Origin: Macrostomum lignano
Taxonomy: Eukaryota
Direction of reading: 5' to 3'
Assembly (NCBI GenBank): GCA_002269645.1
Contig: NIVC01001652.1
Span: forward strand, 62,001-126,000
Length of the DNA stretch: 64,000 nucleotides
A model generated the notes under the pieces. It saw only the letters and a program-made list of their open reading frames with translations. It was not told the DNA's origin and did no database searches. Positions 15,401 through 55,920 of the stretch are shown piece after piece. The translations under genes were made by a program, and so were the position numbers. Numbering within the stretch: the stretch's first letter is position 1; every line of letters begins with the position of its first letter.

Positions 15401-15570
15401 GAGCCGGCGATGAGGCCGGCGACGCGGAGTTCGCCAGCTCGGCCCCTGAAGTTGATTCGGGCCAGCCGGCGAGGGACGTCGAATCGCCGCAGATGCGCCG
15501 CTCAGCGCGAACGCGACAGGAACCGGACCGGCTGCTGTACACTAAACCGGGAACTCCCGGATGTGACTGA
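12441..15570 (+). CDS. pol: Pol (protease, RT, RNase H, integrase); originally continuous with gag
   Basis: VDTGA; FSKLDLSECYLQF, RLPYG, RIDD; LAADASSVGIG, EKEALA, TDHQPL; HHCC plus D-D-E (MDFAGP, SDNG, NGLVER). No internal stops. Confidence 0.96.
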
Positions 15571-15935: not shown

Positions 15936-16211
15936 GTTGGGTTACGTAAACTTATTCAGTCGAATACTAACCGCGGCTAAATTTGCTTAACTTGCCATGG
16001 CATCAACCTCAATAAAATTTTGTTAATGAATCTTTTGAAATGAAAAAATATCTGTAAAAATCGGGAACCGTGAGATCAGCTGATCTAGCTGAAACGCTGC
16101 ACTCTATGGCAATTAGTTGTCAACTGCACCCTCGAGTTTTTTCTCTGCGGCTTGCTGATCGATAAGAATTTTCGTCTGCCAATCTCGTCCCGTCCGTCAG
16201 CCCAAGCCGTC

Positions 16212-20371: not shown

Positions 20372-20882
20372 GTTGAGGCAAAATGGTCGCTGCAGCTCCA
20401 GTTAAACAAATCTGTACATTTTTTGACTGCACTATTGATACTACTGCTAAACTACTGACTTTTTTGATAATCAATTTCTCCGATTTTATGCAGTTCCTAT
20501 TTGCCTTTCTTCAACGTCCTTCAAATATATTTAGCAACCAATTTCAACGCGAAACTCTGTGAAAGGCGAATCTCTTTTTGAAAAATTTATTTGTTGAAAA
20601 TCAGCTTGAAAAACTAAAAAAACGTTTTGGGATTTTCTAGTAAGCTGGTTTGCGGTCAACTGCAGTGCGTTTCACACCGAAGTATTTTATTAAAATACTG
20701 TAAAGTTTTGTGGAGAAAGCAAGTAAGCAAGTATAAAGAAGGTCAAATCAAATAAAAGAATTCCAGCCTGAATAACCAGGACAGTAAAATTATTTACAGC
20801 TCTCGACTCCTGTACCTGTTCAGCTGCCTCTGACGGCCCTCGGATGAAGAAGGTCAAGTCAAGCACGATTGTTAAGCAGATT

Positions 20883-23299: not shown

Positions 23300-24374
<1,075 letters not shown>

Positions 24375-24872
24375 AATCAATTTAGGATGGAAGACAATTG
24401 AGGTCACACTTAATTTTAGCTTTCTTTATCAGTCTATGGGTGTGCCCCAACTTGTATGACTAACAATGTACAATATTTTTAGAAATGTATTTTTAGCAAG
24501 TGTGCAATATGTGTAAATTTGCAAAGTAATGGTAATTGCTATAATAAGTACTTTGTGAGTTCCATGTTCAAGCTTTCAACTCTGATTCAGACGCCGCTCA
24601 GGCTTTGGTTGCTCGCAAATTTGGCTTTATTTCATTTTATCGGAAAGAATTTCAGTATCTGATAGATAAAAACAGCAGTTTTTTGAATGCACAATTTATG
24701 AATTTTCACTTTGCACAATTTATTCATTAGTTATACTGTTTCTCGTCGTAAAATGAAACAAACAAAAAACTATAGAATTTTGCCTCACAAATTTATTTCC
24801 GAATAATTACGCTCGTACGATAAAGCACAACATAAACCAATAATACATAACATAAACTACATAAAAAAGCCA

Positions 24873-25520
24873 TCAGTTAATTTCTTCATTGTCCACAGTT
24901 GAGGCGCCGGCATATGCCGCAACCGGTGTCTCTGCAGCTGCCAGCGGGTCTTCTTCTCTGGCATCAAATCCGGAATGTTCCTGCAACGCTAATTGCTGCT
25001 CCGGTGGAGTCGGTAGCGGCCTGCTCTGCACGGGAGTGGCGACTGCCTCAGTCATCGGCTGCTGCTCTGGTGTCTGCTCACTACGGGAAGTCGTGCGGAG
25101 ACGAGTGGAGCTGCCAGTTGACTGCCTGAGCATGGGTTTTAGCTCGATCTTTTTCACTCGCTTCAAAAGCCAAGCAATCAAAGCGGCAACTCCGGTGAGA
25201 AATGCTACGAATGAGCAGACGATGATTACCAGCAACCAGGTTTCTTCGCTTAAAAAGACGGAGACTGCGCTTGACTCATCCAAAGGTGCTGGCAGTGTTG
25301 AAGACTCATGAGATGTGACTCGGTCACCAGGCGCTGGCGGTGTCATGGTTACGCTGCTCAACGCTGGTGGCTGCGTCAAGACGCACTGGCCAACGTGGGG
25401 GTCGAGCTTGGTGTTCTCGGGACACACCGGATACGCGAAGACGAGGTCCAACAGATGCGTACACAGCAGAGCGAGCAGTCTAGCGAAAATGTTTAACAAG
25501 CGCTTCATGTTTACAGCCAT
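24873..25520 (-). CDS. Small TNFR-like receptor R1 (2-Cys hairpin)
   Basis: Signal peptide, CPENTKLDPHVGQC (C-x12-C), S/T/P stalk, TM WLLVIIVCSFVAFLTGVAALIAWLL, basic stop-transfer KRVKK, tail containing RPLPTPP. Confidence 0.7.
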   Translation of the reverse strand: MAVNMKRLLNIFARLLALLCTHLLDLVFAYPVCPENTKLDPHVGQCVLTQPPALSSVTMTPPAPGDRVTSHESSTLPAPLDESSAVSVFLSEETWLLVIIVCSFVAFLTGVAALIAWLLKRVKKIELKPMLRQSTGSSTRLRTTSRSEQTPEQQPMTEAVATPVQSRPLPTPPEQQLALQEHSGFDAREEDPLAAAETPVAAYAGASTVDNEEIN

Positions 25521-26912
25521 GTCGAGTAGTCAGGGATTGTTCTAAAATTCGTCTTTAACGATCGATGCGTTTTATGTTTTCTCCACGGCTGGTCCATGGA
25601 GAATCTGTGGCAATTCATTCTTGTTTAATGAATGCCATCAAGTTTAAGGCGTGCTATATTGGACCATTATTTAATATAATAGCCAGCTATATATATATAA
25701 ATGCATGTAATGGCTATATATAACAGCTTTAAAGACAATAGAATATTTATTAACCATGCGTCGGGACTATTTTTAAAATTACAAGGTAACGCTCGCACAC
25801 ACATTGATCCAGTTTGCATAGAAACGCTTGACTCATCGTCTTTAAGCAATCAATAAGCAACCGATTATTGAGTTGTTCAACAGAGGCAGGCTATACATGT
25901 ACTAGTGAATGAAGTCGCTGTCGATGTGCTATTTGCTCTTATTATTTATGACTCGAATTAAGAACGAACTACGAAGCTATGTTTATCTGATTGTCGGAAA
26001 GTTCTTTTACATTCCAGAACTTTTCCACTGTTCTATTTTTGCTTTTTCTTGGAACATTCTGGAACATTCTCGATGTAATGCACATATAAATAGTGAATAG
26101 TGTGCATACAAAAACTACAATAGATAAAACATTCTTTGCTCGACTATCTGAAATGGCTTAAGATACTCTGCTCTCGAAAGACCTGCAGTGCGTGCTGCTT
26201 CTCCACGACTTTCGTCGTACCCGTTGTACAGAAAAGTGTTACATTGAATAAACTTGTGACAAATGTAAAAAAACATTTCCCAACAATCAGATAGTTACTA
26301 CAACCTCACCCACACCACGCCTCACCACACCACACCACTTGATAATCGATTCCTGAGAGAAGAGATCAGAAATTTGGGATTCGATCCAAGTGCAGAATGT
26401 CCCGATCTCAGTCGAACAAACAAAAACGATGCTTGAATTCTACAAGAAATAATTTTTCAGCAAAGCAATCTGAAACACTCGTTCACTGTGGCTGCTTTGA
26501 AAGCACCATTGACTCCCAAATCCTTAAGTTTCTGGCGTCAAATTTCTCTGAGGCCACTGTTTCGTGCTGTGGAGTCAGGGAGACTCCTGGTTGAGTTTAG
26601 ATTACATCTCTACTAAAATCAATTTTGGATTTTAGATATTTCAATGCTCCATGAAAATTTCGATTGCGGCCCTATTTGAAGTTCAAGAGAGTATTGTAGT
26701 TCGTTCATTTAGTCGATACATTATTTATCATTATACGCTCGTAAATGTGGGTACAGGGTACTGATTTTTATATTTTATAACATTGGCTGAATTATTTGAA
26801 AAAATTTATACAACTAAAAAATTTTTACGCATATATTGCATGAAATATTGTAAAAGCTGTGCATTTAGATAACTAGCTTATTTTGTGAACAATAATACGC
26901 TATCCGCAGCTG

Positions 26913-27663
26913 TCAACAACTCAGTCCCGCGTACTCCGGTCGCACCGGATCCTTGACCAGCAGATTGAATGCCTCTGCACCATCTGGCCCATCGTCATGT
27001 TGAACGTCCTGAAGGAGCTCTTCCTCAGGGACAGGTGGCAGCGGCCGCTTGTTGATCACTAGTTCCAGATGACCACCTGAGAAAGTTTAAAGTTAAGTCT
27101 TTAGGAACGAAAGCTCATGAGATCAAACCTGTCGATCCTCATGAACAGAATGAACTACATGTAAATTCAGTAGTTAGTTACAGACAATACAACAAAACAT
27201 TAGAGCTCTCACCGAAAGGTTCGGGACTGCCAATGCTGATTTTACCGCTGTCACAACCATCATTGTTAATATTTCCAGACTCAACATCTGTTCTTGACCA
27301 GGTGAGCAGCTTGTCCTGACGCTTCTGTCTAACCAAAGTCACCAATCGGTACAACAACATTCCGAAAGCCGCCATACCAGCAAGCGCCAGTAGTGCAATG
27401 ATGCTCGGCGTCAGTCTCTCTGTCGAGGGATTTTGCGACGTACTACCGACGTGGTTCATTGTCGAGTCTGTGGAAATCTGACCCATCCATCCAGTGGTCA
27501 AAGCGTCGAACTTTGGTAGAGGCTGAAGTTGCACGCACATGCTGATGCTGGGGTCGAAGCGCTGATTGACCGGGCAGTCTGCTGTTCTTGTTGCATCATT
27601 CAAAGCCGCAACCATTAGCAATAACAGGGACCAGGTCTCCCATGGTGACTTGAAAATCAGCAT
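26913..27663 (-). CDS. Small TNFR-like receptor R2; exons 27663-27213, 27076-26913
   Basis: Signal, CPVNQRFDPSISMC, TM IIALLALAGMAAFGMLLY. A phase-1 intron (GTGAGA...TTTCTCAG) adds an exon missing from the ORF track: GHLELVINKRPLPPVPEEELL...PEYAGLSC*. Confidence 0.68.
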
Positions 27664-28261
27664 ACTTTATTGTTAACTCTGGGAATATCAAACAAAAGTA
27701 TTTCAAACAATTTTATATTGAGCTCGTGTTAACGTTCTATTAATAGACAGGGCAACTCGGCGTCATGACTCATTCAAGAAAAATTTAATTCATTAATGAC
27801 TCAAAGCACCACTTGTTCGTTTGCTTCTATGCAGAAACTATTTTAGTCAATGACAGGCCCACAAGCCAAGAATTGTGAAATATAAGATAAAATTATGAAT
27901 GAACGAACTACAATGATGCAACGTTATTCGACGTTAAAATTTCGCCAGGTCACACGCTCCTCGTATTTTCGGCGATGATGAATGCCTAGTCACCAAAAGA
28001 GCTTTTCTACATGTAAAAGCGCTGTTCGAAATGAAAAAGACATCAAAATACTGTGGATTCTAAGGTGTGCTTAAGCAGTCTCTCAAAGTTTTTCGGGTCC
28101 AAAACTATGAGTTATGCTTTCTCTACATAATCTTCCCGCTTAATACCAGTTCAAATTTTCGAGTTGCAAACTTTTGTACAATAGATACGAGATCAAAATC
28201 ATATATCTGAGTCTGCTACGTCTCTTGTCTCTATTTCTTCCTAGAAGGTGGAATGAGTAGA

Positions 28262-28592
28262 ACTAGTCATGAGTGAGTCATGAGCAGAACTGGTGATGGG
28301 TGAGTCATGAGCAGAGCTGGTGATAGTTGAGTCATGAGCAGAGCTGGTGATGGGTGAGTCATGAGCAGAGCTGGTGATGAGTGAGTAATGAGCAGAGTTG
28401 GTGATGGGTGAGTCATGAGCAGAGCTGGTGATAGGTGGGTCATGAGCAGAGCTGGTGATGGGTGAGTCATGAGCAGAGCTGGTGATAGGTGGGTCATGAG
28501 CAGAGCTGGTGATGGGTGAGTCATGAGCAGAGCTGGTGATGAGTGAGTAATGAGCAGAGTTGGTGATGGGTGAGTCATGAGCAGAACTAGTT
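28262..28592. repeat. 27-bp minisatellite
   Basis: Unit tcatgagcagagctggtgatgggtgag. Confidence 0.93.
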
Positions 28593-29059
28593 GCTTTAAG
28601 ACAATAGCAAGATAACACTAAATATCTAGTTAGCTCGAACCGTTGGCATTGAAATTAGCTATTCTGAAGAGATTACAGAACCCATTATGAAATTAATCTA
28701 TGACACGCTGCTTCGGCCGTGTCATCGAAAAAGTGCACAATCAATAAGAAATATATACTTTTATATTGTGCCCCGAAAGGGCCGTTTTCTGTTTCAACAG
28801 CGGCGATTAAATTAAGCAAACGAAAAAGAAGAATTCAAATTAATGTAAAGTTATTTCGATTTCTCAAAAACTGTTGCCAGAATGCTCTTACAAAACAGAA
28901 AAAACTTTCAAAAATACTTTCTGTGGAAAATAATACTGAATGAATGAAGATTGCATAATCAATACGAGCGTAATAGTTATCAATAATAATATTTGATTAG
29001 ACCTGCCCCAATTCGCCAGATGTGCAAACGACAGCTCAGCCGCAGTTATTGCGCAGTAG

Positions 29060-29245
29060 GGGGGGGGGAGTCGCCACACACACCCTCAGTTACCCCAGCT
29101 AATGCTGGCACCCACTTTACAGCTGGGTGAACTGAAGCAACGCAGAACTAAGCATCTTGCTCAAGGACACAAATTGTTCCGAGTGGGTCGAGAATCGAAC
29201 CCCCGACCTTTCAGTCGTGAGTCTGACGCTCTAACCACTAGGCAA
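29060..29245 (-). mobile_element. tRNA-derived SINE
   Basis: On the minus strand: A box TAGTGGTTAGAGC, B box GGTTCGATTC, then TGTGTCCTTGAGCAAGATGCTTA...CACCCAGCTGTAAA. This resembles the conserved central domain of V/Meta-type SINEs. Confidence 0.72.
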
Positions 29246-29251
29246 CAATCC

Positions 29252-29433
29252 CACTAGGCTACAACCCCCTCTAGGCTACAACCCCCTCTAGGCTACAACC
29301 CCCTCTAGGCTACAACCCCCTCTAGGCTACAACCCCCTCTAGGCTACAACCCCCTCTTGGCTACAACCCCCTCTAGGCTACAACCCCCTCTAGGCTACAA
29401 CCCCCTCTAGGCTACAACCCCCTCTTGGCTACA
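29252..29433. repeat. 18-bp minisatellite abutting the SINE head
   Basis: Unit ctaggctacaaccccct(c). Confidence 0.92.
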
Positions 29434-29504
29434 ATAGATGGAGGGTTGTAGCCAATAGTCGAGAATGCTTCTAGCATTTTATGATTCATTCAAATATGAA
29501 TAGA

Positions 29505-30273
29505 TTACCGTGCATATTCAACAATCGCAGAGCCAAATCTTCTATAAAAAAGCATGCATTTAAGCTGAGTCATGGGTACTCTCAGGACATGCAGATCTAC
29601 GAACTGACCCATTTTTCTGATACACAATCGAATTCATAACTGTGTTCGCTCGCTGCTCGTTTCCATGGTGATTTGCAGGCTGACTCGCTGACGCAAATTC
29701 GCGCTCTCCTGTCTGCTGAGAAGCTGGAGAGTCGGTTCCAGCTGACTGGCCGGCTGCTGCATCGTGTTGGTTGCCATCGCAACTCGTATGTAGAAACGAT
29801 CTACGCTCTTCATCACAAGGCGACGCTGCTTCGTCGGTGTTGACATCAGGTGGGACAGAAGCTGATGAGCCCTTTGCGGCCTGCCTTTCTCCCTGCCTGG
29901 CTCTGACAAACTTCGTGTACAGCAGAATGAGAGCCAGGATGCTAACTGTCAGAATGGCAGCAAGTACGAGCACTCCGATGACGATCCAAATGGTTGATTC
30001 ATCGGCTGCCTGAGCTGGTGAGCTCACTTTAGCGTCTGGACGCCACTCGTCAGGGGCGCCACTCGGCTTGCCTGTCGAGTTGGCAACGCAGCAGACTGGA
30101 TGGTCGCGACAGGTGCTCAGGTAGTGCATGTGGACTTGGATTTCCGGTGAAGGCAGCGGGCAGCGGAGGCACATCTGCTGGCCCGAGTCGAAGTACTCGC
30201 CAGCCTTTGAGCAGGTGTTGCCGTAAGCTTGAACAGCTAGCAGCAAAGTGAATGGAATTGACAAGATGCTCAT
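29505..30273 (-). CDS. Small TNFR-like receptor R3a (6-Cys ectodomain). Unspliced it stops at 29560; alternatively exons 30273-29609 + 29541-29505
   Basis: MSILSIPFTLLLAVQAYG, then CSKAGEYFDSGQQMCLRC...CRDHPVCC, resembling BCMA CSQNEYFDSLLHACIPC. TM IWIVIGVLVLAAILTVSILALILLY. Confidence 0.78.
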
Positions 30274-30724
30274 GTTGAAGGTCTTGATGACTTTTAATAA
30301 CAATTTCTGTAAGGTTAGGTCTGTGACTTTTTCAACTTTTCAGAGCTCAGAAATATAATGAGTCAGTTCCAGGTTCAATTTACAGTGAATGCTTCACTTA
30401 GAATCTATTTATATCCATTACTCGTCTCAACACTGGTCAGCGGTAGTGCTCAATCTGAGAGCACTGTGGTACACTTGAATACTCAGAGAGCTCATTGCTG
30501 TGTACTCAGGACTGCACATTGCAGAGTACAGTGAGGGCAATTAGCGGTGTACCTCAACGGTAACTGTTGTGTACTGACTTGATAAAACATTTATTATCTA
30601 TTAATTATTAATAATTTATTAGTACTTTTTGCGTATTTTCCTTTCGTTTTTTCCATATGCGGTTGACGTGCTGATGAAATTTGGAGACTTGGCAAGGCTG
30701 CACTGAGGCACAGTGCTGATTGGC

Positions 30725-30875
30725 GCACAGGGGTGTACTGAATACACTAGCGCTTATGTGGAAAATCCGACCTTCTGGCAGAATCGTTGAATATCTCGAC
30801 GGTCCTGAGGACTGGCGACTTGATTCCTGTTTGAGAAGGTGCGCAACAAAAAGTCAGCCCGTGTTCTTGAATTTC
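30725..30875. repeat. Dispersed repeat; copies also at about 35900-36055 (same strand) and about 47888-48040 (inverted)
   Basis: Shared gtactgaatacact..cgcttatg.ggaaaatccgaccttctgg.agaatcgttgaatatctcgacg. Confidence 0.8.
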
Positions 30876-31442
30876 GTGTGCCTGTGTTGCTCCGTTCCGG
30901 CGCAGCAAAAAAATTGTCAGGGGGTCCCCCTTTTGGTAGTTTGACGGGAGGAAAAATGGCTCGCATTGCAAAGCCGCGCCCACACCATTGCAGAGCAGTT
31001 TACAATTCAGAAGTTCAGAAGGCGAGAAATTGGGAATTTAGTTCTAAAAATTATGAAATCTCCCCAATAAATTTCGCAACGCAACGATTTTTTTCAGTCC
31101 ACCATGAGTAATCGTACGAGTATGGCTTATGCATTCGAACTGGTTTAGTTTAAGTTTAAAGAAAGTACAGAGGCTTCTGTCTGCCAGGTTCGTCTTATAC
31201 ATGTATTTCAAATTAGGTTAGGGAAATCACCGAGATTGCTGTTGGTTTTGCAATAAATCAAACCGAATTGTAAAAAAAATCAAGCTTTATCTGACTGAAA
31301 AATGCTCTGAAATGAACATAACATGAATAACCGATCAGGACAAATTATTTGGCTTTTTGATTGAAAGTGCATAACAAAGAAAAATATGGGAGATTATTGC
31401 TTGGATAATACAGTCAACTTTAAGCGAAGTTAGGTGTGACGC

Positions 31443-32120
31443 CTAAGGCACAAACTCGTAGGTACCGGTCGCAGCCGTGCCTTCATCACCATCAGCATTA
31501 ACGGATGGGTTCCGGTTTTCCAGAGCAGTCGAAAGAAGCTGCAGTCTCGCCTCTCCGTCTCGGCCTTCAGGAGAGCCGCTGCCAGTCACCGAGCCGGGCG
31601 CACCAGTGATCTCTGCGGCGTTTCCATCCTCCTCGCCTGTGGCGTTTCCGACCTCCGCGCCTGTCCTGAAGCCGTGCGGTAATTCTTGGCTCTTGTGAGA
31701 AAACTTCCAGACACCGAGCATGATCAAAGCAATGGCCAGGACAGGAGCGGCTGCGCCAAAAACCATCCAACTGGTTGACATCCCCTGGGCCTGGAGCGGT
31801 GAGCTCAAAGTTGTGGTGCCGCTGCTGCAACTGCTGCTGCTGCTGCTGCTGCTGCTGTGCGGCGGCTTCCAGCTGGGAACAGCTGCTGACCCGGATGTCG
31901 TGTTGGCAACGCAGCAGACTGGATGGTCGCGACAGGTGCTGAGGTAGTGCAGGTGGATTAGGATTTCCGATGAAGGCAGCGGGCAGCGGAGGCACATCTG
32001 CTGGCCCGGGTCGAAGTACTCGTCAGGCTTTGAGCAGTTGCGGTTGTTAGCTTGTGCGGCGAGCAGCAGTGTGAATTGAATTGACAAGCTGATGGCAGCA
32101 GCTTTATCGATTTTGTACAT
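31443..32120 (-). CDS. Small TNFR-like receptor R4 (R3-type ectodomain, different TM and tail)
   Basis: CSKPDEYFDPGQQMCLRCPLPSSEILIHLHYLSTCRDHPVCC, poly-Ser stalk, TM WMVFGAAAPVLAIALIMLGVW, tail ending GTYEFVP*. Confidence 0.78.
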   Translation of the reverse strand: MYKIDKAAAISLSIQFTLLLAAQANNRNCSKPDEYFDPGQQMCLRCPLPSSEILIHLHYLSTCRDHPVCCVANTTSGSAAVPSWKPPHSSSSSSSSSCSSGTTTLSSPLQAQGMSTSWMVFGAAAPVLAIALIMLGVWKFSHKSQELPHGFRTGAEVGNATGEEDGNAAEITGAPGSVTGSGSPEGRDGEARLQLLSTALENRNPSVNADGDEGTAATGTYEFVP

Positions 32121-32483
32121 GAAGATCATCGTTCTTGAGTTGTCTGAAGATTTTATTAAGCACTTGACAAGTTTAATGTCTGCTTTTAAAGGTTTATCTA
32201 GACTAAGACAAGTAAAATTTAGTTCCAAGTCCAAAAAGGTTTTTCCGCGGAAAAACCGTGTAGTGTCACGTACATTTATTTATTTATTTTTATAGAGAAT
32301 TCGTTACTTAGGGGCTTTCAGACAGAGATAGCCAGAGCCACTCACAGTGTGTTGAGCGAGATGGAGCGCCATTGTGTCAAGGACTACTTAAGTATTTATT
32401 CTGATATTTGTACAAGGCAGTTACGCAAAAAATGGTTGAATTCAATCAGTTTTATACAATCGCAGTTTTTTTAATTTTTAAGA

Positions 32484-33548
32484 TCAATTTTCAGCATTTT
32501 CAACAGAGCTGAGACGCTCATAGCCAGCATCTGAGGAGCTGTCGATTACCTCCTGAGGCTCAGCGGCGGCAGTTGCGGCTCGAGGCTGCCGATTGCAGCG
32601 CCAGACCATCACCACCAGCAGCCCCAGGAGAAGGACCACCGCTGACCAAGAAGCGACCAGCAAAACCATTGCAAACTGGGTGTCAGTCCTGTCAGTCTCA
32701 CCGGTCGACAGCGTAGATGGCGTCCCGCTGGGGTTCGAACTGGCGGACCGCGGTTCTGCCCAGGTCGCTCCGTCGGGGCATCGGACGCAGAGGTTCTGGC
32801 CGGGGTCGTAGCAGCGGCCTGCGGGCGGGGAGAGGCGGGGGTCGCTAAAGAAATTCTGAAGTCAATTTTGCATTGGCGAATGGCGCGGCCCGGGAACTTT
32901 ATGGGGAATATCGGGAGGGAGTGGTGAATATTGAGGATGGGGGATATCGGGGATGGGGGATATCGGGGATGGGATATCGGGGATGGGGGATATCGGGGAT
33001 GGGATATCGGGGATGGGGGATATCGGGGATGGGGGATATCGGGGATGGGGGATATCGGGGATGGGATATCGGGGATGGGGGATATCGGGGATGGGGGATG
33101 TCGGGGATGGGGGATATCGGGGATGGGGGATATCGGGGATGGGATTTCGGGGATGGGGGATATCAGGGATGGGAATTAAATAAAAAGGGAGTTATCAGAG
33201 ATTGGGAATAACCGGGGATGGTGAATATTGGGGGGATGGGGTTTCTTGGAACACTGCTCGAGCTTAGTTAATGTTAACTAGATTATTAGTAAAAAACATT
33301 TTTTACAACTTTCCAAAGCAATGGAGCATTGGAAAATTTCTATAAAATAGCTCGTAGTGTTGCAATACATATGAATACTTGCGTCAATTTTAATTTTAGA
33401 AACAACACACGTGTGCACATAAGAAAGGGAATAACGTCAATTAGCTTGAAATAAAATTTTATCTACTTGAAAAAAATTAAAAGAAAAAATATTTCGAAAT
33501 GCTTGACTCACCTGGCCGCCCGGAGCAGACAGCAGACCCAGACAGCAT
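32484..33548 (-). CDS. Small TNFR-like receptor R5, apparently without signal peptide; exons 33548-33512, 32818-32484
   Basis: MLSGSAVCSGRPG|RCYDPGQNLCVRCPDG...TM VLLVASWSAVVLLLGLLVVMVW...PQEVID..GYERL. Strong donor CAG|GTGAGT, pyrimidine-rich acceptor, phases match (1). Confidence 0.62.
32935..33240. repeat. G-rich minisatellite (gggatatcggggatgg) in the R5 intron
   Basis: 16-18-bp degenerate units. Confidence 0.9.
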
Positions 33549-33585
33549 AGCGACAGACAGCTTACAGCTGAATTCCCAGCGCGCC

Positions 33586-33594
33586 CAGGTTTAT
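33586..33594 (-). promoter_or_regulatory. Candidate TATA box of R5
   Basis: CTTATAAAC on the minus strand about 40 nt upstream of the ATG at 33548. Confidence 0.35.
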
Positions 33595-34044
33595 AAGCTT
33601 TTGAGGCCAAGTCAGAGATAAGATAGCAAACATGGAGTTTAGTTGGGTGTAATATTATTTAGAGGAAATATATAATTTTTGGTCAAAGTTAGCGATCAAT
33701 AAATTAAGTTATTAAAAATAAATACACTCAGCAACATTGAAAAGTCGCCACTCTATGCGCCACCCAGTGAGCGATTTCTCTTGGACTGTTCTGAAATCAA
33801 AGATACGAGAAAACTGATCGGGGTAGCTTTGATCCGTAGCGTTAACCCTCGCACACCGCCCCCTCCACTTCATTCCTCAACTCAAGTCTGCCCAGGCGTA
33901 GCTAATTTGCGTCACTCGCAAAGATTGAGAGATTTTACCTGCACTCACTCTCAATCTTCTGTGATGGCGACTTTTCGATGTTGCTGAATATACGAGTATT
34001 TGACGTTAGACAAGAGGTCTCTAGGCTGAATATCAAAAATTCTG

Positions 34045-34412
34045 TTAGTTGATGACGGCAGGCTTGTGACGATGGCAGCTACTCGCATGGATTTGTAGGC
34101 TGGCTGGTCTGCGTGACTCTTTGCTGAGATTCCGCAGATTCCGCAGATTCCGCATGTTCCGCAGATTCCGCAGATTCCGCAGATTCCGCAGATTCCGCAG
34201 ATTCCGCAGATTCCGCATGTTCCGCAGATTCCGCAGATTCCGCAGATTCCGCAGATTCCGCAGATTCCGCATGTTCCGCAGGCACCGCAGGCAGTTTACC
34301 AGACGGTCGAGGCTGGTTAGCATTGAATAGTTGAATATCATCACCCTGCTGTCCTTGATCTTCCTTCTCTTGACGCCTGTTAGATCGCGTTGAACGACGC
34401 TTGCAATAGCCA
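34045..34412 (-). pseudogene. Orphan cytoplasmic-tail fragment of an R6-type receptor with (AES)n repeat
   Basis: YCKRRSTRSNRRQEKEDQGQQGD...[13 protein letters not shown](SAE)n is homologous to 36890-37130. It has no ectodomain or TM and is fused directly to the 3' flank of R3b. Confidence 0.7.
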
Positions 34413-34439
34413 ACGTGCATACCGTTTAACGGTTACAGA

Positions 34440-35208
34440 TTACCGTGCAGCTTCAACAATCGCAGAGCCAAATCTTCTATAAAAAAGCATGCATTTAAGC
34501 TGAGTCATAGGTACTCTCAGGATATGCAGATCTACGAACTGACCCATTTTTCTGATACACAATCGAATTCATAACTGTGTTCGCTCGCTGCTCGTTTCCA
34601 TGGTGATTTGCAGGCTGACTCGCTGACGCAAATTCGCGCTCTCCTGTCTGCTGAGAAGCTGGAGAGTCGGTTCCAGCTGACTGGCCGGCTGCTGCATCGT
34701 GTTGGTTGCCATGGCAACTCGTATGTAGAAACGATCTACGCTCTTCATCACAAGGCGACGCTGCTTCGTCGGTGTTGACATCAGGTGGGACAGAAGCTGA
34801 TGAGCCCTTTTCGGCCTGCCTTTCTCCCTGCCTGGCTCTGACAAACTTCACGTACACCAGAATGAGAGCCAGGATTTGAACTGTCAGAAGACCAGCAAGC
34901 ACGAGCGCACCGATGACGATCCAAACGGTTGATTCACCAGCTGCCTGAGCTGGTGAGCTCGCTGTAGCGTCTGGACGCCACTCGTCAGGGGCGCCTCTCG
35001 GCTTGCCTGTCGAGTTGGCAACGCAGCAGACTGGATGGTTGCGACAGGTGCTCAAGTAGTGCAGGTGGACTTGGATTTCCGATGAAGGCAGCGGGCAGCG
35101 GAGGCACATCTGCTGGCCCGAGTCGAAGTACTCGCCAGCCTTTGAGCAGGTGTTGCCGTAAGCTTGAGCAGCTAGCAGCAATGTGATTAGAGCTGACAAG
35201 ATACTCAT
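34440..35208 (-). CDS. Small TNFR-like receptor R3b (recent duplicate of R3a). Unspliced it stops at 34495; alternatively exons 35208-34544 + 34476-34440
   Basis: Nearly collinear with R3a (same Cys pattern, TM and tail), with scattered substitutions. Confidence 0.78.
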
Positions 35209-36629
35209 GTTGAAGTCTTGAAAATTTTTTGTAAGGTTAGCTCTGTGAATCTTTCAAATTTTGTCATACTGGAGCTCAGTATAATAATGAGTCAGTTCCA
35301 GGTACAATGTACAGTAAATGCTTGACTGATAATCTATTTTTACCCATTACCCGTCTCAACTTCGGTCAGTGACAGTGTTTCAATCTGAGAGTGCTGTGAC
35401 ACAGTTGAGCACACAAGAGAGCTCATTGCTGTGTACTCAGAACTGCACAGTGCAGAGTACAGTGAGAGAAATTAGCGGTGTATCTCAACGGTAATGGTTG
35501 TGTACTGCCCTAACAATGTTTTTAGATTAGCTATTCAGTACATGTACTGGACACTTTTTATAGATTATTTTCTTTGTTTATTTTCCTTAAATTTCTACTG
35601 TCAGTAGAGTGACAGATAAAAATTTAGTTTAATTTAGACCAGATATTTTTGTTGTACGAAATGTACGTACATTGTAAGCTTTTTAATTTAAAAAACTCGT
35701 GAGTAAGCTTAAAAGATTCAAACAAAAATGTTGTACATCATTCGTTTGATGACGGAATGTTTGAGTCCATAGTCACCTGGTACCACCCGCTGAAGATCTC
35801 AGAAGACCAACGAAGTCAGAGCTGATGCAGACACATGCGGTTGACGTGCTAATGAAATTTGGAGGCTTGGCAAGGCTGCACTGAGGCGCAGGGCTGATTG
35901 GCGCACAGGGGTGCATTGAATACACTGGCGCTTATGTGGAAAATCCGACCTTCTGGCAGAATCGTTGAATATCTCGACGGTCCTGAGGACTGGCGACTTG
36001 ATTCCTGTTTGAGAAGGTGCGCAACAAAAAGTTAGCCCGTGTTCTTGAATTTCGTGTGCCTGCGTTGCTCCGTTCCGGCGCAGTAAAAAATGTCAGGGGG
36101 TCCCCCTTTTGGTAGTTTGACGGGAGGAAAAATGGCTCGCATTGCAAAGCCGCGCCCACACCATTGCAGAGCAGTTTACAATTCAGAAGTTCAGGAGGCG
36201 AGAAATTGGGAATTTAGTTCTAAAAATTATGAAATCTCCCCAATAAATTTCGCAACGCAACGATTTTTTTCAGTCCACCATGAGTAATCGTACGAGTATA
36301 GCTTATGCATTCGAACTTGTTTAGTTTAAGTTTAAAGAAAGTACAGAGGCTTCTGTCTGCCAGGTTCGTCTTATACATGTATTTCAAATTAGGTTAGGGA
36401 AATCACCGAGATTGCTGTCGGTTCTGCAGTAAATCAAACCGAATTGTAAAAAAAATCAAGCTTTATCTGACTAAAAATGCTCTGAAATGAACATAACATG
36501 AATAACCGATCAGGACAAATTATTTGGTTTTTGGATTGAAAGTGCATAACAAAAAATATGGGAGATTATTGCTTGGATAATACAGTCAACTTTAAGCGAA
36601 GTTAGGTGTGACGCCTAAGGCACAGACTC

Positions 36630-37455
36630 TTAGGTACCAGTCGCAGCCGTGCCTTCATCACCATCAGCATAAGCGGGTCGGTCCCGGTTTTCCAGAGCAG
36701 TCGAAAGAAGCTGCAGTCTCGCCTCTCCGTCTCGGCCTTCAGGAGAGCCGCTGCCAGTCACCGAGCCGGGCGCACCAGTGATCTCTGCGGCGTTTCCATC
36801 CTCCTCGCCTGTGGCGTTTCCGACCTCCGCGCCTGTCCTGAAGCCGTGCGGTAATTCTTGGCTCTTGTGAGAAAACCTTGTGACTCCTTGCTGAGATTCC
36901 GCAGATTCCGCAGATTCCGCAGATTCCGCAGATTCCGCAGATTCCGCAGATTCCGCAGATTTCGCAGATTCCGCAGATTCCGCAGATTCCGCAGGCACCG
37001 CAGGCAGTTTACCAGACGGTCGAGGCTGGTCAGCTTTGAGTAGTTTAGTATTATCACCCTGCTGTTCTTGATCTTCCAGCTCTTGACGCCTGTTAAGATC
37101 GCGTTGAACGACGCTTGCAATAGCAAACGATGGCAATGATGGCGAAAGCAGCCAAAATCAGCACAACAGGTATCACAATTGGTAGGACAATCGCAAGATT
37201 AGGAGAAGACGACAAATTCGAATCGGACTCAGTAGAAACAGACACCGTAGACGCAGCTTCAGTTGATGATGCCGCCCGCTGGGTAGTCAGGCCGTCTCCG
37301 CACTCTCCCAAGTCAATCTCAGCCTGAGTGCAGTGGACGCACCTGTTCTGGCCCGGGTCCCATCGCATGCCCGGCTGGCACACGCTGACTTCGGCGACGG
37401 CCATCAGTGACAGCGGCAACAGCTGCAGCAGAAGCAGACAGTGGCCAGCTGGCAT
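36630..37455 (-). CDS. Small TNFR-like receptor R6, chimeric, with a 1-nt frameshift and stop at 37093-37095
   Basis: MPAGHCLLLLQLLPLSLMAVAEVSVCQPGMRWDPGQNRCVHC...C, TM LAIVLPIVIPVVLILAAFAIIAIV. The downstream frame encodes (AES)n and then a tail nearly identical to that of R4. Confidence 0.68.
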
Positions 37456-37984
37456 TCCGCACTTATCGAATCTCAGCATTTTCAAAGCTTTAATAAAAAG
37501 ACCTGAAACTGTGTGACTCTGCTTATGTCTAAAAATAAGCAGATAAGACCCGCCAGCCAGATATGGAAGTTTCTTAATTTCGCTGAAATCAGAAATTTCA
37601 CTCAAAAAAGCAAATAAAAAACTTTTTGTCAGTTCAATTCTGCAAAGCAGACGGTCCAGAAGCAATGAAGAAAGCGGTACAAATTAATGTGTTTATTTAT
37701 GCTGATGCTTCAGATATCAATATCTGCATCATTTCTAATACCGGTACTCTAAATTTGAGGAATGGAAAACTTTGAAAACTGCGGCTCTGCAATGCAGCTT
37801 GGCAACAGATGGAATTAGAATTGGCAGATTAGCGGAGCACAGAACTGGCTTGACTGCACAATTTCTACGGATTAATTACCTAAACAGCAGACTAACCTAA
37901 TTTTTCTGACTTGATTATGCCTCTTTAATAAGGTAGCTTAGATAGAGACTGCCCAAATCCACCTGTGCAAATCCGGCAACCTCA

Positions 37985-38826
37985 TTGGGATAAATGGGAT
38001 CTCATTGGGATAAATGGGATCTCATTAGGATAAATGGGATCCCATTGGGATAAATGGGATCTCAATGGGATTAATAGCATCACACGGGGATAAATGGGAT
38101 CTCATTGGGATAAATAGCATCACACGGGGATAAATGGGATCTCATTGGGATAAATAGCATCACACGGGGATAAATGGGATCTCATTGGGATAAATAGCAT
38201 CACACGGGGATAAATGGGATCTCATTGGGATAAATAGCATCACACGGGGATAAATGGGATCTCATTGGGATAAATAGCATCACACGGGGATGAATGGGAT
38301 CTCATTGGGATTAATAGCATCACACGGGGATAAATGGGATCTCATTGGGATAAATAGCATCACACGGGGATAAATGGGATCTCATTGGGATAAATAGCAT
38401 CACACGGGGATAAATGGGATCTCATTGGGATAAATAGCATCACACGGGGATAAATGGGATCTCATTGGGATAAATAGCATCACACGGGGATAAATGGGAT
38501 CTCATTAGGATAAATAGCATCACACGGGGATAAATGGGATCTCATTGGGATAAATAGCATCACACGGGGATAAATGGAATCTCATTGGGATAAATAGCAT
38601 CACATGGGGATAAATGGGATCTCATTGGGATAAATAGCATCACACGGGGATAAATGGGATCTCATTGGGATAAATAGCATCACACGGGGATAAATGGGAT
38701 CTCATTGGGATAAATAGCATCACACGGGGATAAATGGGATCTCATTGGGATAAATAGCATCACACGGGGATAAATGGGATCTCATTGGGATAAATAGCAT
38801 CACACGGGGATAAATGGGATCTCATG
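37985..38826. repeat. 40-bp minisatellite immediately 3' of WDR11
   Basis: Unit ggataaatagcatcacacggggataaatgggatctcattg. Confidence 0.95.
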
Positions 38827-38847: not shown

Positions 38848-41800
38848 TCACTCCGTCAGTTTCTGCCCCTCCTTATTTCCGTCTCCAGCAGAGCCCAGCT
38901 CAGCCAGCTCCGCGCACCTGCTGGCACCCGCCTCATCGCCTAGCAGCGCCAGCTGTCGCGCCCAGGCCGCGTGCGCCTCGCGCCAGGCAGCTCGGTCGGC
39001 CGGCTCGGCGCCGGACATGTCCGAGCTGTCCGGAATGCGGCCGGCCTCAGCGCAGGCGGCCAGGAGGCGGCAGGCGAGGCCGGGCAGGCCAAGGCGGCGG
39101 CAAAGGCAGTCGCAGGCGGCCGCCCAGTCGCCCTGGGCGATGAGCAGCAAAGCCGCCTGGCACGGGTCTGTCCCGGCCAGGTGTCCGGCGTGCCTTCGGA
39201 CAATCTCGGCCGCTTCGGCCGGGTCGCGAAGACTGCACTTGGCCAGCCAAAGGGCCGTGCTGCGCTCGCCGTGCTGCTCCAAGTAGCGGCAGGCGTCCAG
39301 CTTGCGGTCGATGAGGCACAGAAGCTGGGCGCCCTCGGACACGCGCCCGTTGGCCATCAGGCTGGTGGCCACGAGCTTCACGGTGCTCTGCGCGTTAGGC
39401 GACGCCGGCTGGTTGGCCAGCAGGCAGGCCAGGTGCAGGTCGGCCAGGTAGGACGGGCTGGCGGGCTCGGTCTCCAGCAGCAGCTGGACGGCCTTGTCCA
39501 GCTGGCCGAACAGCACCAGGCACTCCACCAGCCGCTGCGTCTGCTGCGGGCTAAGCCGGCGCCTGCGGCCGAGCAGACAGGCGAGCCGGCGGGCCTGCCA
39601 GCGCCGGTACACCGGGTGCGGGCTGAGCGAGTCCCAGCCGGCCTCCAGCTCGGCGCTCGGGTCGGCTGACTGCGGCAGGAAGCGCCGGCAGAGCAGCCAG
39701 AAGCGGACCTGGCGTTGGCGGGGGGGGGGGGTGAAGGGGCTAGAGCCGAAGAAGAATGGGGATCACACGGGGAGAACAGTGATCACACAGGGAGAATGAG
39801 GATGACACAAGGAGAATAGGGATCAAAAAATGAGAATAGGGATCACACGAGGAGAACAGGGATCACACGGGGAGAACAGGGATCGCACGGAGAGAACAGG
39901 GATCACACGGGGAGAACAGGGATCACACGGGGAGAACAGGGATCACACGGGGAGAACAGGGATCACACGGGGAGAACAGTGATCACACGGGGAGAATGGG
40001 GATCACACAAGGAGAATAGGGATCACACAAAGAGAATGGGGATCACACGGGGAGAATGGGGATCACACGGGGAGAATGAGGATCACACAAGGAGAATGGG
40101 GATCACACGGAGAGAATGGGGATCACACGGAGAGAATGGGGATCACACAAGGAGAATGGGGATCACACGGAGAGAATGGGGATCACACGGAGAGAATAGG
40201 GATCACACGGAGAGAATGGGGATCACACAAAGAGAATGGGGATCACACAAAGAGAATGGGGATCACACAAAGAAAATGGGGATCACACGGGCAGAATGGG
40301 GATCACACAAAAAGAATGGGGATCACACGGGGAGAATGGGGATCACACAAGGAGAATAGGGATCACACAAGGAGAATGGGATCACACGGAGAGAATGGGG
40401 ATCACACAAGGAGAGAATGGGGATCACACAAGGAGAATGGGGATCACACAAGGAGAATGGGGATCACACGGAGAGAATGGGGATCACACGGAGAGAATGG
40501 GGATCACACGGAGAGAATGGGGATCACACAAAGAGAATGGGGATCACACAAGGAGAGAATGGGGATCACACAAGGAGAATAGGGATCACACAAGGAGAAT
40601 GGGGATCACACGGGGAGAATGGGGATCACACGGGGAGAATGGGGATCACACGGGGAGAATGGGGATCACACGGGGAGAATGGGGATCACACGGTGAGAAT
40701 GGGGATCACACGGGGAGAATGGGGATCACACGGGGAGAATGGGGATCACACGGGGAGAATGGGGATCACACTCACCTCGAAGGGGTCGCAGAACAGCATG
40801 GCGGTGAGTAGGCTTCGGTCTGCAGTGCTCAGGCCCGGCGCTGCCAGCTCGGCCAGCCAGTCCGGATCGAAGCGGCGCAGCAGCTCCCGAGCCTCGTCAT
40901 CCTCGGCGTCGCCGGCCTCCGCCCCGCCGTCGGCCATCAGCAGGCGGTGCTTGGCCAGGCGGACGGCCTTGTCGGAAAACAATCCGGGAATCGCTGGCGG
41001 CCGCTGGAAAGCCGCCGGGTCCGCGGGGGACAGGCAGATCCGCAGCGACATGTCGGTGACGCGGATTAGCCAGTCGGCCGTGAGCAGCAGCGGCTTGTCG
41101 GAGGCGGCCCAGTCGGCATCCAGCAGGTCCGGCAGGTGGCGGGGGCAGCGCGCGCTGGCCATGGCTGTCAGCTTCGTGGCGGTGTCGCGGGCGTCCCACA
41201 GCTCCAGGCCGTTGGGAAACAGTACCAGGAATTTGTAGTTGCCTTTGACGGGCGAGGGTTGGTTGCTACTGAACTCAACCGCCTTGCCAATGCGGCTGTT
41301 CGCTCTGCTACCCTCTCTTCGACCGACCTCTTCTCTCTTTCTTCTTCCATCTCTTCCGCCTTCCCCTCGGCCCTCTCCTCCGCCCTCTCCTCCGCCCTCT
41401 CCTCTGCCCTCTCCTCCACCTTCTTCTCCGCCCTCTCCTCCGCCCTCTCCTCCGCCCTCTCCTCCACCCTCTCCTCCGCCCTCTCCTCCACCTTCTTCTC
41501 CGCCCTCTCCTCTGCCCTCTTTTCCGCCCTCTCCTCCGCCCTCTCCTCCACCCTCTCCTCCACCTTCTTCTCCGCCCTCTCCTCTGCCCTCTCCTCCGCC
41601 CTCTCCTCCGCCCTCTCCTCCGCCCTCTCCTCCACCTTCTTCTCCGCCCTCTCCTCTGCCCTCTCCTCCGCCCTCTCCTCCGCCCTCTCCTCCGCCCTCT
41701 CCTCCACCTTCTTCTCCGCCCTCTCCTCTGCCCTCTTTTCCACCCTCTCCTCCGCCCTCTCCTCCGCCCTCTTCTCCGCCCTCTTCTCCGCCCTCTTCTC

Positions 41801-51253: not shown

Positions 51254-55920
<4,667 letters not shown>

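What the first reader, a model, noticed from the sequence alone, without database searches (positions are those of the whole stretch)
24873..37455. Tandem cluster of seven miniature BCMA/BAFF-R-like single-pass receptor genes
Seen: seven same-strand genes, each encoding a tiny Cys hairpin, a Ser/Thr stalk, one TM and a low-complexity tail. The hairpins are CPENTKLDPHVGQC, CPVNQRFDPSISMC, CSKAGEYFDSGQQMCLRC (x2), CSKPDEYFDPGQQMCLRC, CSGRPGRCYDPGQNLCVRC and CQPGMRWDPGQNRCVHC. Known: the single-CRD TNF receptors BCMA, TACI and BAFF-R bind ligand through a C-x12-C hairpin with an aromatic-Asp core (BCMA CSQNEYFDSLLHACIPC). Inference: this is a lineage-specific, rapidly diversifying array of minimal TNFR-type receptors in an invertebrate, probably a flatworm, possibly for immune recognition, death signalling or allorecognition. 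Such short, divergent genes are easily missed by annotation.
Basis: partly seen in the sequence, partly recalled or inferred. Interest (0 to 1): 0.85.

Follow-up and report, generated by a model that had tools for sequence, protein, structure and literature searches.

The report
Flatworm cluster of tiny hairpin membrane proteins
Seven neighbouring genes of the flatworm Macrostomum lignano each encode a very small membrane protein tipped by one disulfide-clamped hairpin. They look like stripped-down TNF-type receptors, but the resemblance rests on about 20 residues and is not proven.

Summary
All seven hairpins lie at the stated places on the minus strand, and each sits in the layout leader, hairpin, Ser/Thr/Pro stalk, one TM helix, disordered tail. 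The window is Macrostomum lignano. The array recurs in the same gene order at the two other assembled copies of the locus, each only partly sampled.

- **Real genes:** the reading frames are intact across copies, with dN/dS of 0.2-0.6 (about 1 for G3/G6). Five of the seven have a transcript-based GenBank model in at least one copy. Only three of seven are annotated on this contig.
- **Corrections:** G5 is split by a 693-nt intron and has no leader. G7 carries one extra T, a frameshift. G3 and G6 come from a recent ~2.2-kb duplication spaced ~5 kb apart.
- **TNFR reading, part supported:** UniProt labels three relatives 'TNFR-Cys'. One family profile ranks BAFF-R and BCMA first in the PDB (E about 0.02). 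Foldseek lists them first, not significantly.
- **Against it:** no Pfam TNFR, BCMA, TACI, BAFF-R or Fn14 model matches, although controls do. A second family profile loses the PDB hits. The ligand-binding DxL motif is absent. The same C-x6-D-x5-C hairpin is common in CBM14-like and furin/ephrin-type repeats.

Verdict: a lineage-specific family of minimal hairpin surface receptors of TNFR-like form. Membership is unproven and BCMA/BAFF-R kinship is not supported.

The parts
24873..25520 (-). G1. Single-exon CDS, 215 aa: leader, 2-Cys hairpin CPENTKLDPHVGQC (25383-25424), stalk, TM, 93-aa tail.
   Evidence: ORF. Motif. Hydropathy. Annotated transcript-based gene. Three intact 215-aa copies in the assembly. 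dN/dS 0.46.
27178..27663 (-). G2. Single-exon CDS, 161 aa, 2-Cys hairpin CPVNQRFDPSISMC (27535-27576). Not annotated on this contig.
   Evidence: Intact and with an identical hairpin in L002 and L003. The L002 copy is annotated. dN/dS 0.35-0.44. Weak CBM_14 hit, E 0.089.
29560..30273 (-). G3. CDS 237 aa with a 6-Cys domain CSKAGEYFDSGQQMCLRC...HYLSTCRDHPVCC. Not annotated on this contig.
   Evidence: Recent duplicate of G6. The L002 homeologue P0002 is annotated and named TNFR-Cys by UniRef.
31443..32129 (-). G4. CDS 228 aa, 6-Cys domain CSKPDEYFDPGQQMCLRC..., poly-Ser stalk, tail shared with G7.
   Evidence: Annotated gene (P0003). dN/dS 0.43-0.60.
32484..32818 (-). G5 exon 2: second half of the hairpin (RCYDPGQNLCVRC), stalk, TM, 41-aa tail.
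   Evidence: Conserved in L002 and L003 with in-frame indels. dN/dS about 0.2. Not annotated in the loci examined that hold it.
33512..33548 (-). G5 exon 1: MLSGSAVCSGRP(G), followed by a GTGAGT donor. There is no signal peptide. The phase-1 intron 32819-33511 contains a 16-bp tandem repeat.
   Evidence: The frame and the donor are conserved in all three loci.
34440..35208 (-). G6. 237-aa unspliced ORF (34495-35208). The annotated 233-aa product uses a 67-nt intron and ends at 34440.
   Evidence: 100% match to BOX15_Mlig007536g1, which UniRef names 'TNFR-Cys domain-containing'.
36630..37479 (-). G7. 4-Cys domain CQPGMRWDPGQNRCVHC...C (37330-37380), stalk, TM, AES-repeat tail, then a G4-type tail. 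An extra T at 37096 breaks the frame in this window.
   Evidence: Intact 344-codon ORF in L002. Not annotated.
34079..34420 (-). 5'-truncated G7-like remnant (end of the TM, then the AES-repeat tail) just downstream of the G6 stop codon.
29502..31679 (.). Segmental duplication, unit A. Its partner is 34437-36851. The blocks are 83-99% identical, 96-99% in the long ones.
   Evidence: families D8-D14.

Best explanation
This is a Macrostomum-restricted, tandemly duplicated family of minimal single-pass cell-surface proteins.

Each protein displays one 14-residue disulfide-clamped beta-hairpin (C-x6-D-x5-C, with an aromatic residue before the Asp). The hairpin sits at the very N-terminus, on a probably O-glycosylated Ser/Thr/Pro stalk. 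Five of the seven, and the dispersed paralogue P0094, continue with C-x2-C, the start of a second module as in TNFR-type and furin/ephrin-receptor-type cysteine-rich repeats. G3, G4, G6 and P0094 share a family-specific 6-Cys domain ending in HY-x3-CRDHPVCC.

Inferred mechanism: the hairpin is the ligand-contact element. The disordered tails carry no folded domain and would signal or traffic through short motifs, namely P-x-Y-A-D-G and Y-x-x-L/V near the C-termini.

In form they resemble the smallest TNF receptors (BCMA, BAFF-R, Fn14, Grindelwald). Descent from TNFRs is possible (I put it at about 0.35) but not shown. Specific kinship with BCMA/TACI/BAFF-R is not supported.

Shown: the genes, their layout, coding constraint, restriction to M. 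lignano, and the generic nature of the hairpin. Inferred: surface location, ligand binding and signalling.
For: - **Layout:**
- **Real genes:** the GenBank annotation of this assembly is built from RNA-seq transcripts (PMC5730564). It calls G1, G4 and G6 here and G2 and G3 homeologues in L002, including a spliced 3' end for G6. ORFs are intact in the homeologous loci examined. dN/dS is 0.2-0.6 for G1, G2, G4 and G5.
- **Family links:** G3, G4, G6 and P0094 match at E = 1e-12 to 1e-41. G5 and G7 join through the hairpin at 1e-4 to 1e-5. G1 and G2 join weakly (1e-3).
- **Hairpin fold:** AlphaFold predicts strands 11-14 and 19-22, with pLDDT about 80 in the G7 model.
- **TNFR-like form:** UniRef 'TNFR-Cys' names. 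BAFF-R and BCMA are the top PDB sequence hits with profile A2. BR3, BCMA and Fn14 top both Foldseek lists.
- **Possible ligands:** M. lignano has 6-10 TNF ligand genes (PMC7519573; preprint supplement).
Against: - No experimental or expression data were available for G5 and G7.
- The link of G1 and G2 to the rest rests on about 27 residues plus position and layout.
- All TNFR signals are below significance, and all come from the same 20 residues.
- Structure models have low confidence (pLDDT 62 and 67).
- TRAF-binding motifs occur at chance frequency, and there is no death domain.
- G3/G6 evolve at dN/dS of about 1, which could mean relaxed constraint rather than function.
Confidence: 0.55

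Rival explanations
1. They are genuine, highly reduced TNF-receptor-superfamily members. They would bind the lineage-specific TNF ligands of M. lignano through the hairpin, as BCMA, BAFF-R and TACI bind BAFF and APRIL.
For: - Hairpin spacing C-x12-C-x2-C is identical to BCMA, TACI and BAFF-R in G7 and within 1-2 residues in G3-G6.
- Profile A2 ranks BAFF-R (E 0.024) and BCMA first in the PDB.
- hhalign P = 5e-4.
- The Foldseek top hits are BR3 (rmsd 0.8 A over 18 residues), BCMA and Fn14.
- UniRef gives 'TNFR-Cys' names to three family clusters.
- G5 starts MLSGSAV-C without a leader, as BCMA starts MLQMAGQ-C.
- M. lignano has 6-10 TNF ligands.
Against: - No Pfam TNFR-family model matches at E up to 10, with working positive controls.
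- Profile A4 gives no TNFR hit.
- hhalign probability is only 31%. The same 20 columns match hairpin repeats from unrelated proteins at 95.6% (a control biased by selection).
- The DxL ligand-contact motif is absent.
- The second half of the 6-Cys domain (C-x17-C-x5-CC) has no TNFR counterpart.
- TRAF motifs are at chance level and there is no death domain.
- G1 and G2 lack the C-x2-C.
Confidence: 0.25
2. They are surface mucin-like or glycan-binding proteins. In this reading the hairpin is the CBM14/peritrophin-type or another generic disulfide hairpin, acquired or evolved independently of TNFRs. They would serve as glycocalyx, adhesion or chitin/glycan-binding proteins rather than as cytokine receptors.
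For: - 71 of the 78 nearest outside hits of the hairpin profile are scored by Pfam as CBM_14, through the C-terminal C4-C5 hairpin of that model.
- G2 is the only window protein with any Pfam hit on its hairpin, and it is CBM_14 (E 0.089).
- The stalks are Ser/Thr/Pro-rich.
- The G1 and G2 ectodomains contain nothing but the hairpin.
Against: - No member reaches the CBM_14 threshold.
- The N-terminal half of CBM14, with its three other cysteines and aromatic chitin-binding residues, is missing.
- C-x2-C follows the hairpin in five of the seven, which CBM14 lacks.
- The long, partly conserved cytoplasmic tails (P-x-YADG shared by G7, the G4 homeologues and P0094) suggest signalling or trafficking.
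Confidence: 0.15
3. They are decaying products of recent duplication in a repeat-rich, partly polyploid genome. In this reading they are open reading frames without function.
For: - dN/dS is about 1 for G3/G6.
- G7 has a frameshift in this window.
- There is a truncated G7-like remnant.
- G5 has no leader.
- The region is full of minisatellites.
Against: - Every member has an intact ORF in at least one, and usually in every, homeologous locus examined.
- Indels are in frame.
- dN/dS is 0.2-0.6 for four genes.
- There are transcript-based gene models, including a spliced one.
- The G7 defect is a single T in a TT run of a long-read assembly (PacBio, from my knowledge), within 1.1 kb that is otherwise 99.5% identical.
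Confidence: 0.05

Closest known systems
BCMA (TNFRSF17), BAFF-R (TNFRSF13C) and TACI (TNFRSF13B)
   Same: - Tiny ectodomain whose main element is a disulfide-clamped beta-hairpin with aromatic-Asp at the same spacing (C-x6-D-x5-C-x2-C).
- One TM helix and no folded cytoplasmic domain.
- They are the best PDB sequence hits with one family profile and top the Foldseek lists.
   Different: - No match to their Pfam models.
- The DxL ligand-contact motif is replaced by D-[PS]-G-Q.
- Six of the seven have signal peptides, whereas these receptors are type III proteins without one (my knowledge).
- The second module is different or absent.
- TRAF motifs are not enriched.
Fn14 (TNFRSF12A) and Drosophila Grindelwald, which are single-CRD TNFRs with a signal peptide
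   Same: Type I layout with one small CRD, a stalk and a short tail. Both appear in the Foldseek lists (2eqp at rank 4-5, 6zt0 at rank 27).
   Different: There is no sequence match: stn_TNFRSF12A is not hit and Grindelwald is not among the PDB profile hits. All the structural matches are non-significant.
CBM14 / peritrophin-A chitin-binding domain, C4-C5 hairpin
   Same: The same CPxGxxFDPxxxxC hairpin. Pfam assigns most outside neighbours of the family profile to CBM_14, and G2 weakly.
   Different: Only the C-terminal third of the CBM14 model is matched. The other four cysteines and the N-terminal half are absent. Scores are below threshold.
Furin-like / ephrin-receptor-like / TNFR_c6-type cysteine-rich repeats of multi-repeat proteins
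   Same: The hairpin plus C-x2-C-P unit aligns at 95.6% hhalign probability with such repeats taken from P0033 (which also carries Pfam TNFR_c6), P0054 and P0080.
   Different: Those proteins carry many tandem units, whereas these carry one. The control set was chosen from the best hits of the family's own profile, so its score is inflated.
The canonical NGFR-like TNFR of flatworms (Bertevello et al. 2020, PMC7519573)
   Same: The same organism. It is the only TNFR that paper reports for M. lignano, alongside several endogenous TNF ligands.
   Different: That receptor has multiple CRDs and a death domain. The genes here have one hairpin or CRD and no death domain. They would not be found by SmTNFR- or PF00020-based searches.

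Membership tests
TNF receptor superfamily (general) | Cysteine-rich domain recognised by the family models (Pfam TNFR_c6 PF00020; PROSITE TNFR-Cys) | tested here: inconclusive
   Pfam gives no hit at E up to 10 for any member or for isolated CRDs. The PS00652 pattern run as a regular expression does not match, but human BCMA does not match it either. UniRef names G6, P0002 and P0094 'TNFR-Cys domain-containing', which implies a PROSITE profile hit that I could not rerun.
TNF receptor superfamily (general) | Binds a trimeric TNF-family ligand | not testable with these tools
   No multimer modelling or binding assay was available. Ligands do exist in M. lignano.
TNF receptor superfamily (general) | Cytoplasmic death domain or TRAF-binding motifs | tested here: not met
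   There is no Pfam domain in any tail. TRAF2 and TRAF6 consensus motifs occur at shuffle expectation: 4 against 3.9, and 2 against 0.7.
BCMA/TACI/BAFF-R subgroup | Match to BCMA-Tall_bind, TACI-CRD2 or BaffR-Tall_bind | tested here: not met
   No hit at E up to 10. Human BCMA (6.5e-23) and BAFF-R (2e-18) controls are found.
BCMA/TACI/BAFF-R subgroup | Hairpin C-x12-C-x2-C with aromatic-Asp | tested here: met
   G7 has exactly x12. G3, G4 and G6 have x13. G5 and P0094 have x14. D-x5-C is found in all. G1 and G2 lack the C-x2-C.
BCMA/TACI/BAFF-R subgroup | DxL motif ((F/Y/W)-D-x-L-(V/T)-(R/G)) at the hairpin tip (my knowledge of the family) | tested here: not met
   The tips read DSGQQ, DPGQQ, DPGQN, DPHVG, DPSIS and DAIQD, with no Leu at +2.
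BCMA/TACI/BAFF-R subgroup | Type III topology (no signal peptide) | tested here: not met
   Six of the seven have an N-terminal hydrophobic leader. Only G5 starts 7 residues before the first Cys.
CBM14 / peritrophin-A | Full six-Cys domain above the Pfam threshold (22.1 bits) | tested here: not met
   Only G2 is hit, at 13.4 bits over model positions 28-46 of 53.
Furin-like / ephrin-receptor-like Cys-rich repeats | Tandem arrays of the hairpin-CxxC unit | tested here: not met
   There is one unit per protein. The unit itself aligns well with such repeats.

The most novel reading that the evidence does not exclude
These genes are the unrecognised receptors for the lineage-specific expansion of TNF ligands in Macrostomum. 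They would be one-hairpin TNF receptors that arose in a flatworm independently of the vertebrate BAFF/APRIL receptors, with members reduced to a single 14-residue disulfide loop (G1, G2). That would set a new lower limit for a TNF-receptor ectodomain.
Probability: 0.2. Interest if true: 0.75.

Novelty: new variant of a known kind. Interest (0 to 1): 0.45.

Why it matters
One published survey states that every flatworm has a single NGFR-like TNF receptor with no diversification, yet finds up to ten TNF ligands in M. lignano (PMC7519573). A later preprint counts 16 Wengen-like and 1 Grindelwald-like receptors there. It uses TNFR_c6-derived models that would probably miss these genes, since TNFR_c6 itself does not match them.

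If even some of this family bind TNF ligands, receptor diversity in a regenerating model flatworm has been underestimated. It would also mean the BCMA/BAFF-R design evolved twice.

If they do not, they are still an undescribed, partly unannotated family of minimal surface proteins in a genetically tractable animal. They are also a useful warning: a 'BCMA-like' hairpin cannot be told from CBM14 or furin-type hairpins by sequence alone.

Tried and rejected
- **Single-sequence search of PDB sequences** with the G6 ectodomain gave nothing at E up to 10.
- **Word-indexed profile search with the whole-ectodomain alignment A1** returned only a G1 paralogue. Low-complexity words probably saturated the candidate list.
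- **Profile A4** (without G1 and G2, with P0094) against the PDB gave only a spurious ribosomal S14 zinc-ribbon hit. The BCMA/BAFF-R ranking therefore depends on how the alignment is composed.
- **Two AlphaFold models** stayed at pLDDT 62 and 67. Foldseek gave no match below E = 1.4, so the fold test is inconclusive rather than supportive.
- **Pfam hits to TMEM154, Psg1, DAG1, DUF1180 and DUF7378** cover the stalk plus TM and fall below threshold. I treated them as compositional.
- **TRAF-motif scan:** PQEVID in G5 resembles the CD40 TRAF6 site (my knowledge), but motif counts equal shuffle expectation.
- **Per-hairpin scores** of human BCMA, TACI and BAFF-R against outside hairpins. The outside hairpins score higher, but they were pre-selected from 1.84 billion proteins, so the comparison is not fair and I did not use it as a test.
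- **Literature search for the locus tags** found nothing.
- **The accession list of the preprint's 16 'Wgn' homologues** is not held, so I could not tell whether any of these genes is among them.

Full report
**What is there**

The window is nuclear DNA of the flatworm Macrostomum lignano. ORF 34495-35208(-) is 100% identical over the 94% of its length that aligns to GenBank BOX15_Mlig007536g1 on contig NIVC01001652 of assembly GCA_002269645.1.

I number the genes G1 to G7 from low to high coordinate. Transcription runs from G7 to G1.

Hydropathy and composition confirm the stated layout:
- An N-terminal hydrophobic leader in six of the seven.
- The hairpin directly after the leader.
- A 40-75-residue stalk with 27-47% Ser/Thr/Pro.
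- One strong TM segment.
- A tail of 41-163 residues with no Pfam domain.

A loose hairpin pattern scanned over all six frames of the 64 kb finds only these genes, plus one artefact inside a minisatellite. The cluster is not a chance pattern.

**Corrections to the anatomy**

- **G5 is spliced.** Exon 1 (33512-33548, MLSGSAVCSGRP-G) is joined across a GT..AG phase-1 intron (32819-33511, filled with a 16-bp tandem repeat) to exon 2 (32484-32818). The reading frame, the ATG and the donor are conserved in the two other copies of the locus. In all three copies there are only seven residues before the first Cys, and the frame is closed upstream. So G5 has no signal peptide, unless an unseen upstream exon or a spliced leader supplies one.
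- **G7 has a frameshift here.** It stops after CYCKRRSTRS because of one extra T at 37096. The L002 copy differs by only four other bases in 1.1 kb and is an intact 344-codon ORF. Its tail is an AES repeat followed by the tail of G4.
- **G3 and G6 are recent duplicates.** A segmental duplication (29502-31679 and 34437-36851, 96-99% identical over the long blocks) made both genes and grafted the G4 tail onto G7.
- **A remnant copy exists.** A 5'-truncated G7-like fragment sits just after the G6 stop codon (34079-34420).
- **Cysteine content differs.** G1 and G2 have two cysteines (hairpin only), G5 and G7 have four, and G3, G4 and G6 have six. The six-Cys genes share the ending HY-x3-CR[DN]HPVCC.

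**Are they real genes?**

The GenBank annotation of this assembly derives from genome-guided RNA-seq transcript assembly (PMC5730564). On this contig it calls only G1, G4 and G6. In the homeologous contig NIVC01000276 (L002) it calls the G6, G3 and G2 copies. G6 has a spliced 67-nt intron at its 3' end. No model exists for G5 or G7 in the loci I examined.

The assembly holds two further copies of the locus: L002, and L003 on NIVC01000280. Where sampled, the gene order matches the window's 7-6-5-4-3-2-1: L002 shows 7-6-5-4-3-2, and L003 shows 5-4-(3/6)-2-1. All ORFs there are intact and the indels are in frame.

| Gene | Nei-Gojobori dN/dS between copies |
|---|---|
| G1 | 0.46 |
| G2 | 0.35-0.44 |
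| G4 | 0.43-0.60 |
| G5 | about 0.2 |
| G3/G6 group | 0.7-1.3 |

The substitution counts are small (3-38 per class). The family therefore codes for protein under moderate constraint. 'Rapid diversification' is supported only for G3/G6.

**How far does the family reach?**

A profile of the seven hairpin regions was scored against 1.84 billion representative proteins without a word filter. Matches covering nearly the whole profile came only from M. lignano: the G3/G6 cluster, G4, and P0094 (BOX15_Mlig031515g1). P0094 is a solitary, spliced paralogue on another contig. It shares the 6-Cys domain and a P-x-Y-A-D-G tail motif with G7 and the G4 homeologues.

BLASTP among members gives three tiers:
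- G3, G4, G6 and P0094 are firmly linked (1e-12 to 1e-41).
- G5 and G7 join through the hairpin (1e-4 to 1e-5).
- G1 and G2 join only weakly (1e-3). Their membership therefore rests largely on position, orientation and layout.

**Is it a TNF receptor, and is it BCMA/BAFF-R-like?**

Evidence for:
- UniRef calls G6, its homeologue and the P0094 cluster 'TNFR-Cys domain-containing'.
- The seven-gene profile A2, searched against all 177,635 distinct PDB sequences, ranks a BAFF-R variant first (E 0.024). BCMA chains take eight of the other ten places (E 0.026-0.62). Only the hairpin and C-x2-C align, 19-22 residues.
- hhalign against an alignment of human BCMA, TACI CRD1, TACI CRD2 and BAFF-R gives P = 5e-4 over 20 columns.
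- AlphaFold predicts the hairpin, followed by two helices in G6 and one in G7. From my own knowledge, a hairpin followed by helices recalls the hairpin plus helix-loop-helix of BCMA. Foldseek lists BCMA, BR3, Fn14 and TACI first.

Evidence against:
- Every one of those signals is below significance. The hhalign probability is 31%. Foldseek E is 1.4 or more. The models have pLDDT of 62 and 67.
- All the signals come from the same 20 residues.
- A second family profile, without G1 and G2 and with P0094, loses the BCMA and BAFF-R hits altogether.
- Pfam TNFR_c6, BCMA-Tall_bind, TACI-CRD2, BaffR-Tall_bind and stn_TNFRSF12A do not match any member at E up to 10, whether whole proteins or isolated domains. 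Human BCMA, BAFF-R and Fn14, typed in as controls, are found at 1e-18 to 1e-29.
- The DxL tip through which BCMA, TACI and BAFF-R contact their ligands (my knowledge) is replaced by D-[PS]-G-Q and similar sequences.
- Six of the seven have leaders, unlike those type III receptors.
- There is no death domain, and TRAF motifs occur at shuffle expectation.

**The hairpin is generic**

The other 105 significant hits of the deep search are almost all multi-repeat proteins made of CPxGxxWDPxxxxCV units. The few whose sources I looked up come from Bdellovibrionales, a Chloroflexota MAG and unnamed metagenome or Logan contigs.

I scanned 78 of them with Pfam:

| Pfam family | Members matched (of 78) |
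|---|---|
| CBM_14 | 71 |
| BCMA-Tall_bind | 4 (weak) |
| TACI-CRD2 | 3 (weak) |
| TNFR_c6 | 1 |

The ten hits examined individually show what lies behind the CBM_14 count: the match comes from summing partial hits to the C4-C5 hairpin of that model. The Pfam models themselves therefore cannot separate a BCMA hairpin from a CBM14 hairpin.

Of the window proteins, only G2 gets any Pfam hit on its hairpin, and it is CBM_14 (E 0.089).

Units that also carry C-x2-C-P occur in P0033, P0054 and P0080. They align with the family at 95.6% hhalign probability, and P0033 also carries Pfam TNFR_c6 domains. This control is inflated because those proteins were selected by the family's own profile. It still shows that the 20-residue unit is a common building block of TNFR-type, furin/ephrin-receptor-type and CBM14-type cysteine-rich modules.

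**Conclusion on mechanism**

The best-supported reading is a lineage-specific family of minimal single-pass surface proteins. They present one disulfide-clamped hairpin on a mucin-like stalk, and they signal or traffic through short motifs in disordered tails. Y-x-x-L/V occurs 4 times against 1.4 expected, and P-x-YADG is shared by distant paralogues.

In form they are closest to the smallest TNF receptors. Descent from TNFR repeats is plausible, at about 0.35. Binding of TNF ligands is possible, at about 0.2-0.25. It is made attractive by the 6-10 endogenous TNF ligands of M. lignano (PMC7519573; preprint supplement). Specific kinship with BCMA, TACI and BAFF-R is not supported.

- The ectodomains do not score better as CBM14 or EGF.
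- They do not score as TNFR either.
- The loci, or at least five of the seven, are transcribed.

**Novelty**

Three relatives carry an automatic UniProt label, but I found no paper describing the family. One survey reports a single NGFR-like TNFR per flatworm. A preprint counts 16 Wengen-like and 1 Grindelwald-like receptors in M. lignano using TNFR_c6-derived models. I could not check whether any of these genes is included. Since TNFR_c6 does not match them, probably not.

The tandem array, the hairpin-only members G1 and G2, the leaderless G5 and the unannotated members appear to be undescribed.

Noticed in passing
window 28253-28585; L003 6089-6967: A 27-bp minisatellite lies between G2 and G3. 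It is stop-free in two frames on the gene strand (ORFs of 125 and 103 aa, e.g. MTHPSPALLMTH...). Its longer homeologue in L003 is annotated in GenBank as a 292-aa protein. That is probably a transcribed repeat taken for a gene by ORF calling.
   Followed up: partly
P0005, P0013, P0038, P0060, P0085 (one search hits): This looks like one bacterial family; the single member traced is a Bdellovibrionales MAG protein. It has a shared N-terminal domain of about 250 aa, then 8-12 tandem 2-Cys hairpins (CPxGxYYDxxxxxCV), then a Pro-rich tail. Pfam sees only partial CBM_14 matches. It appears uncharacterised.
   Followed up: partly
window 23300-24378: A near-perfect (ATCT)n microsatellite of about 270 copies lies directly downstream of G1.
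   Followed up: no
window 43238-45875: A 23-bp minisatellite of 115 copies, 97% matching. It produces stop-free ORFs of 800-900 codons in all three plus-strand frames. It lies within the span of the minus-strand WDR11 gene.
   Followed up: no
window 48551-48751: An interstitial (AAACCC)33 array, that is (GGGTTT)n on the other strand. It looks telomere-like but is not the TTAGGG type.
   Followed up: no
window 12475-15570 (+): An uninterrupted 1031-codon Ty3/gypsy pol ORF with protease, RT, RNase H and integrase domains. It may be a young element.
   Followed up: partly
window 38848 to beyond 45208 (-), and about 16000-20400: The flanking genes are WDR11 (1325 aa, minus strand, immediately upstream of G7) and a SacI-domain (Syja_N) phosphatase gene. 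Each flank recurs at one other copy: WDR11 in L002 and Syja_N in L003. This supports whole-locus homeology.
   Followed up: partly
window 37981-38825, 39753-40771, 53119-54004, 58106-59546, 62272-63188: There is an unusually high density of long minisatellites (19-40-bp units, 20-70 copies) across the window. This fits the reported 15% tandem-repeat content of the genome (PMC5730564).
   Followed up: no
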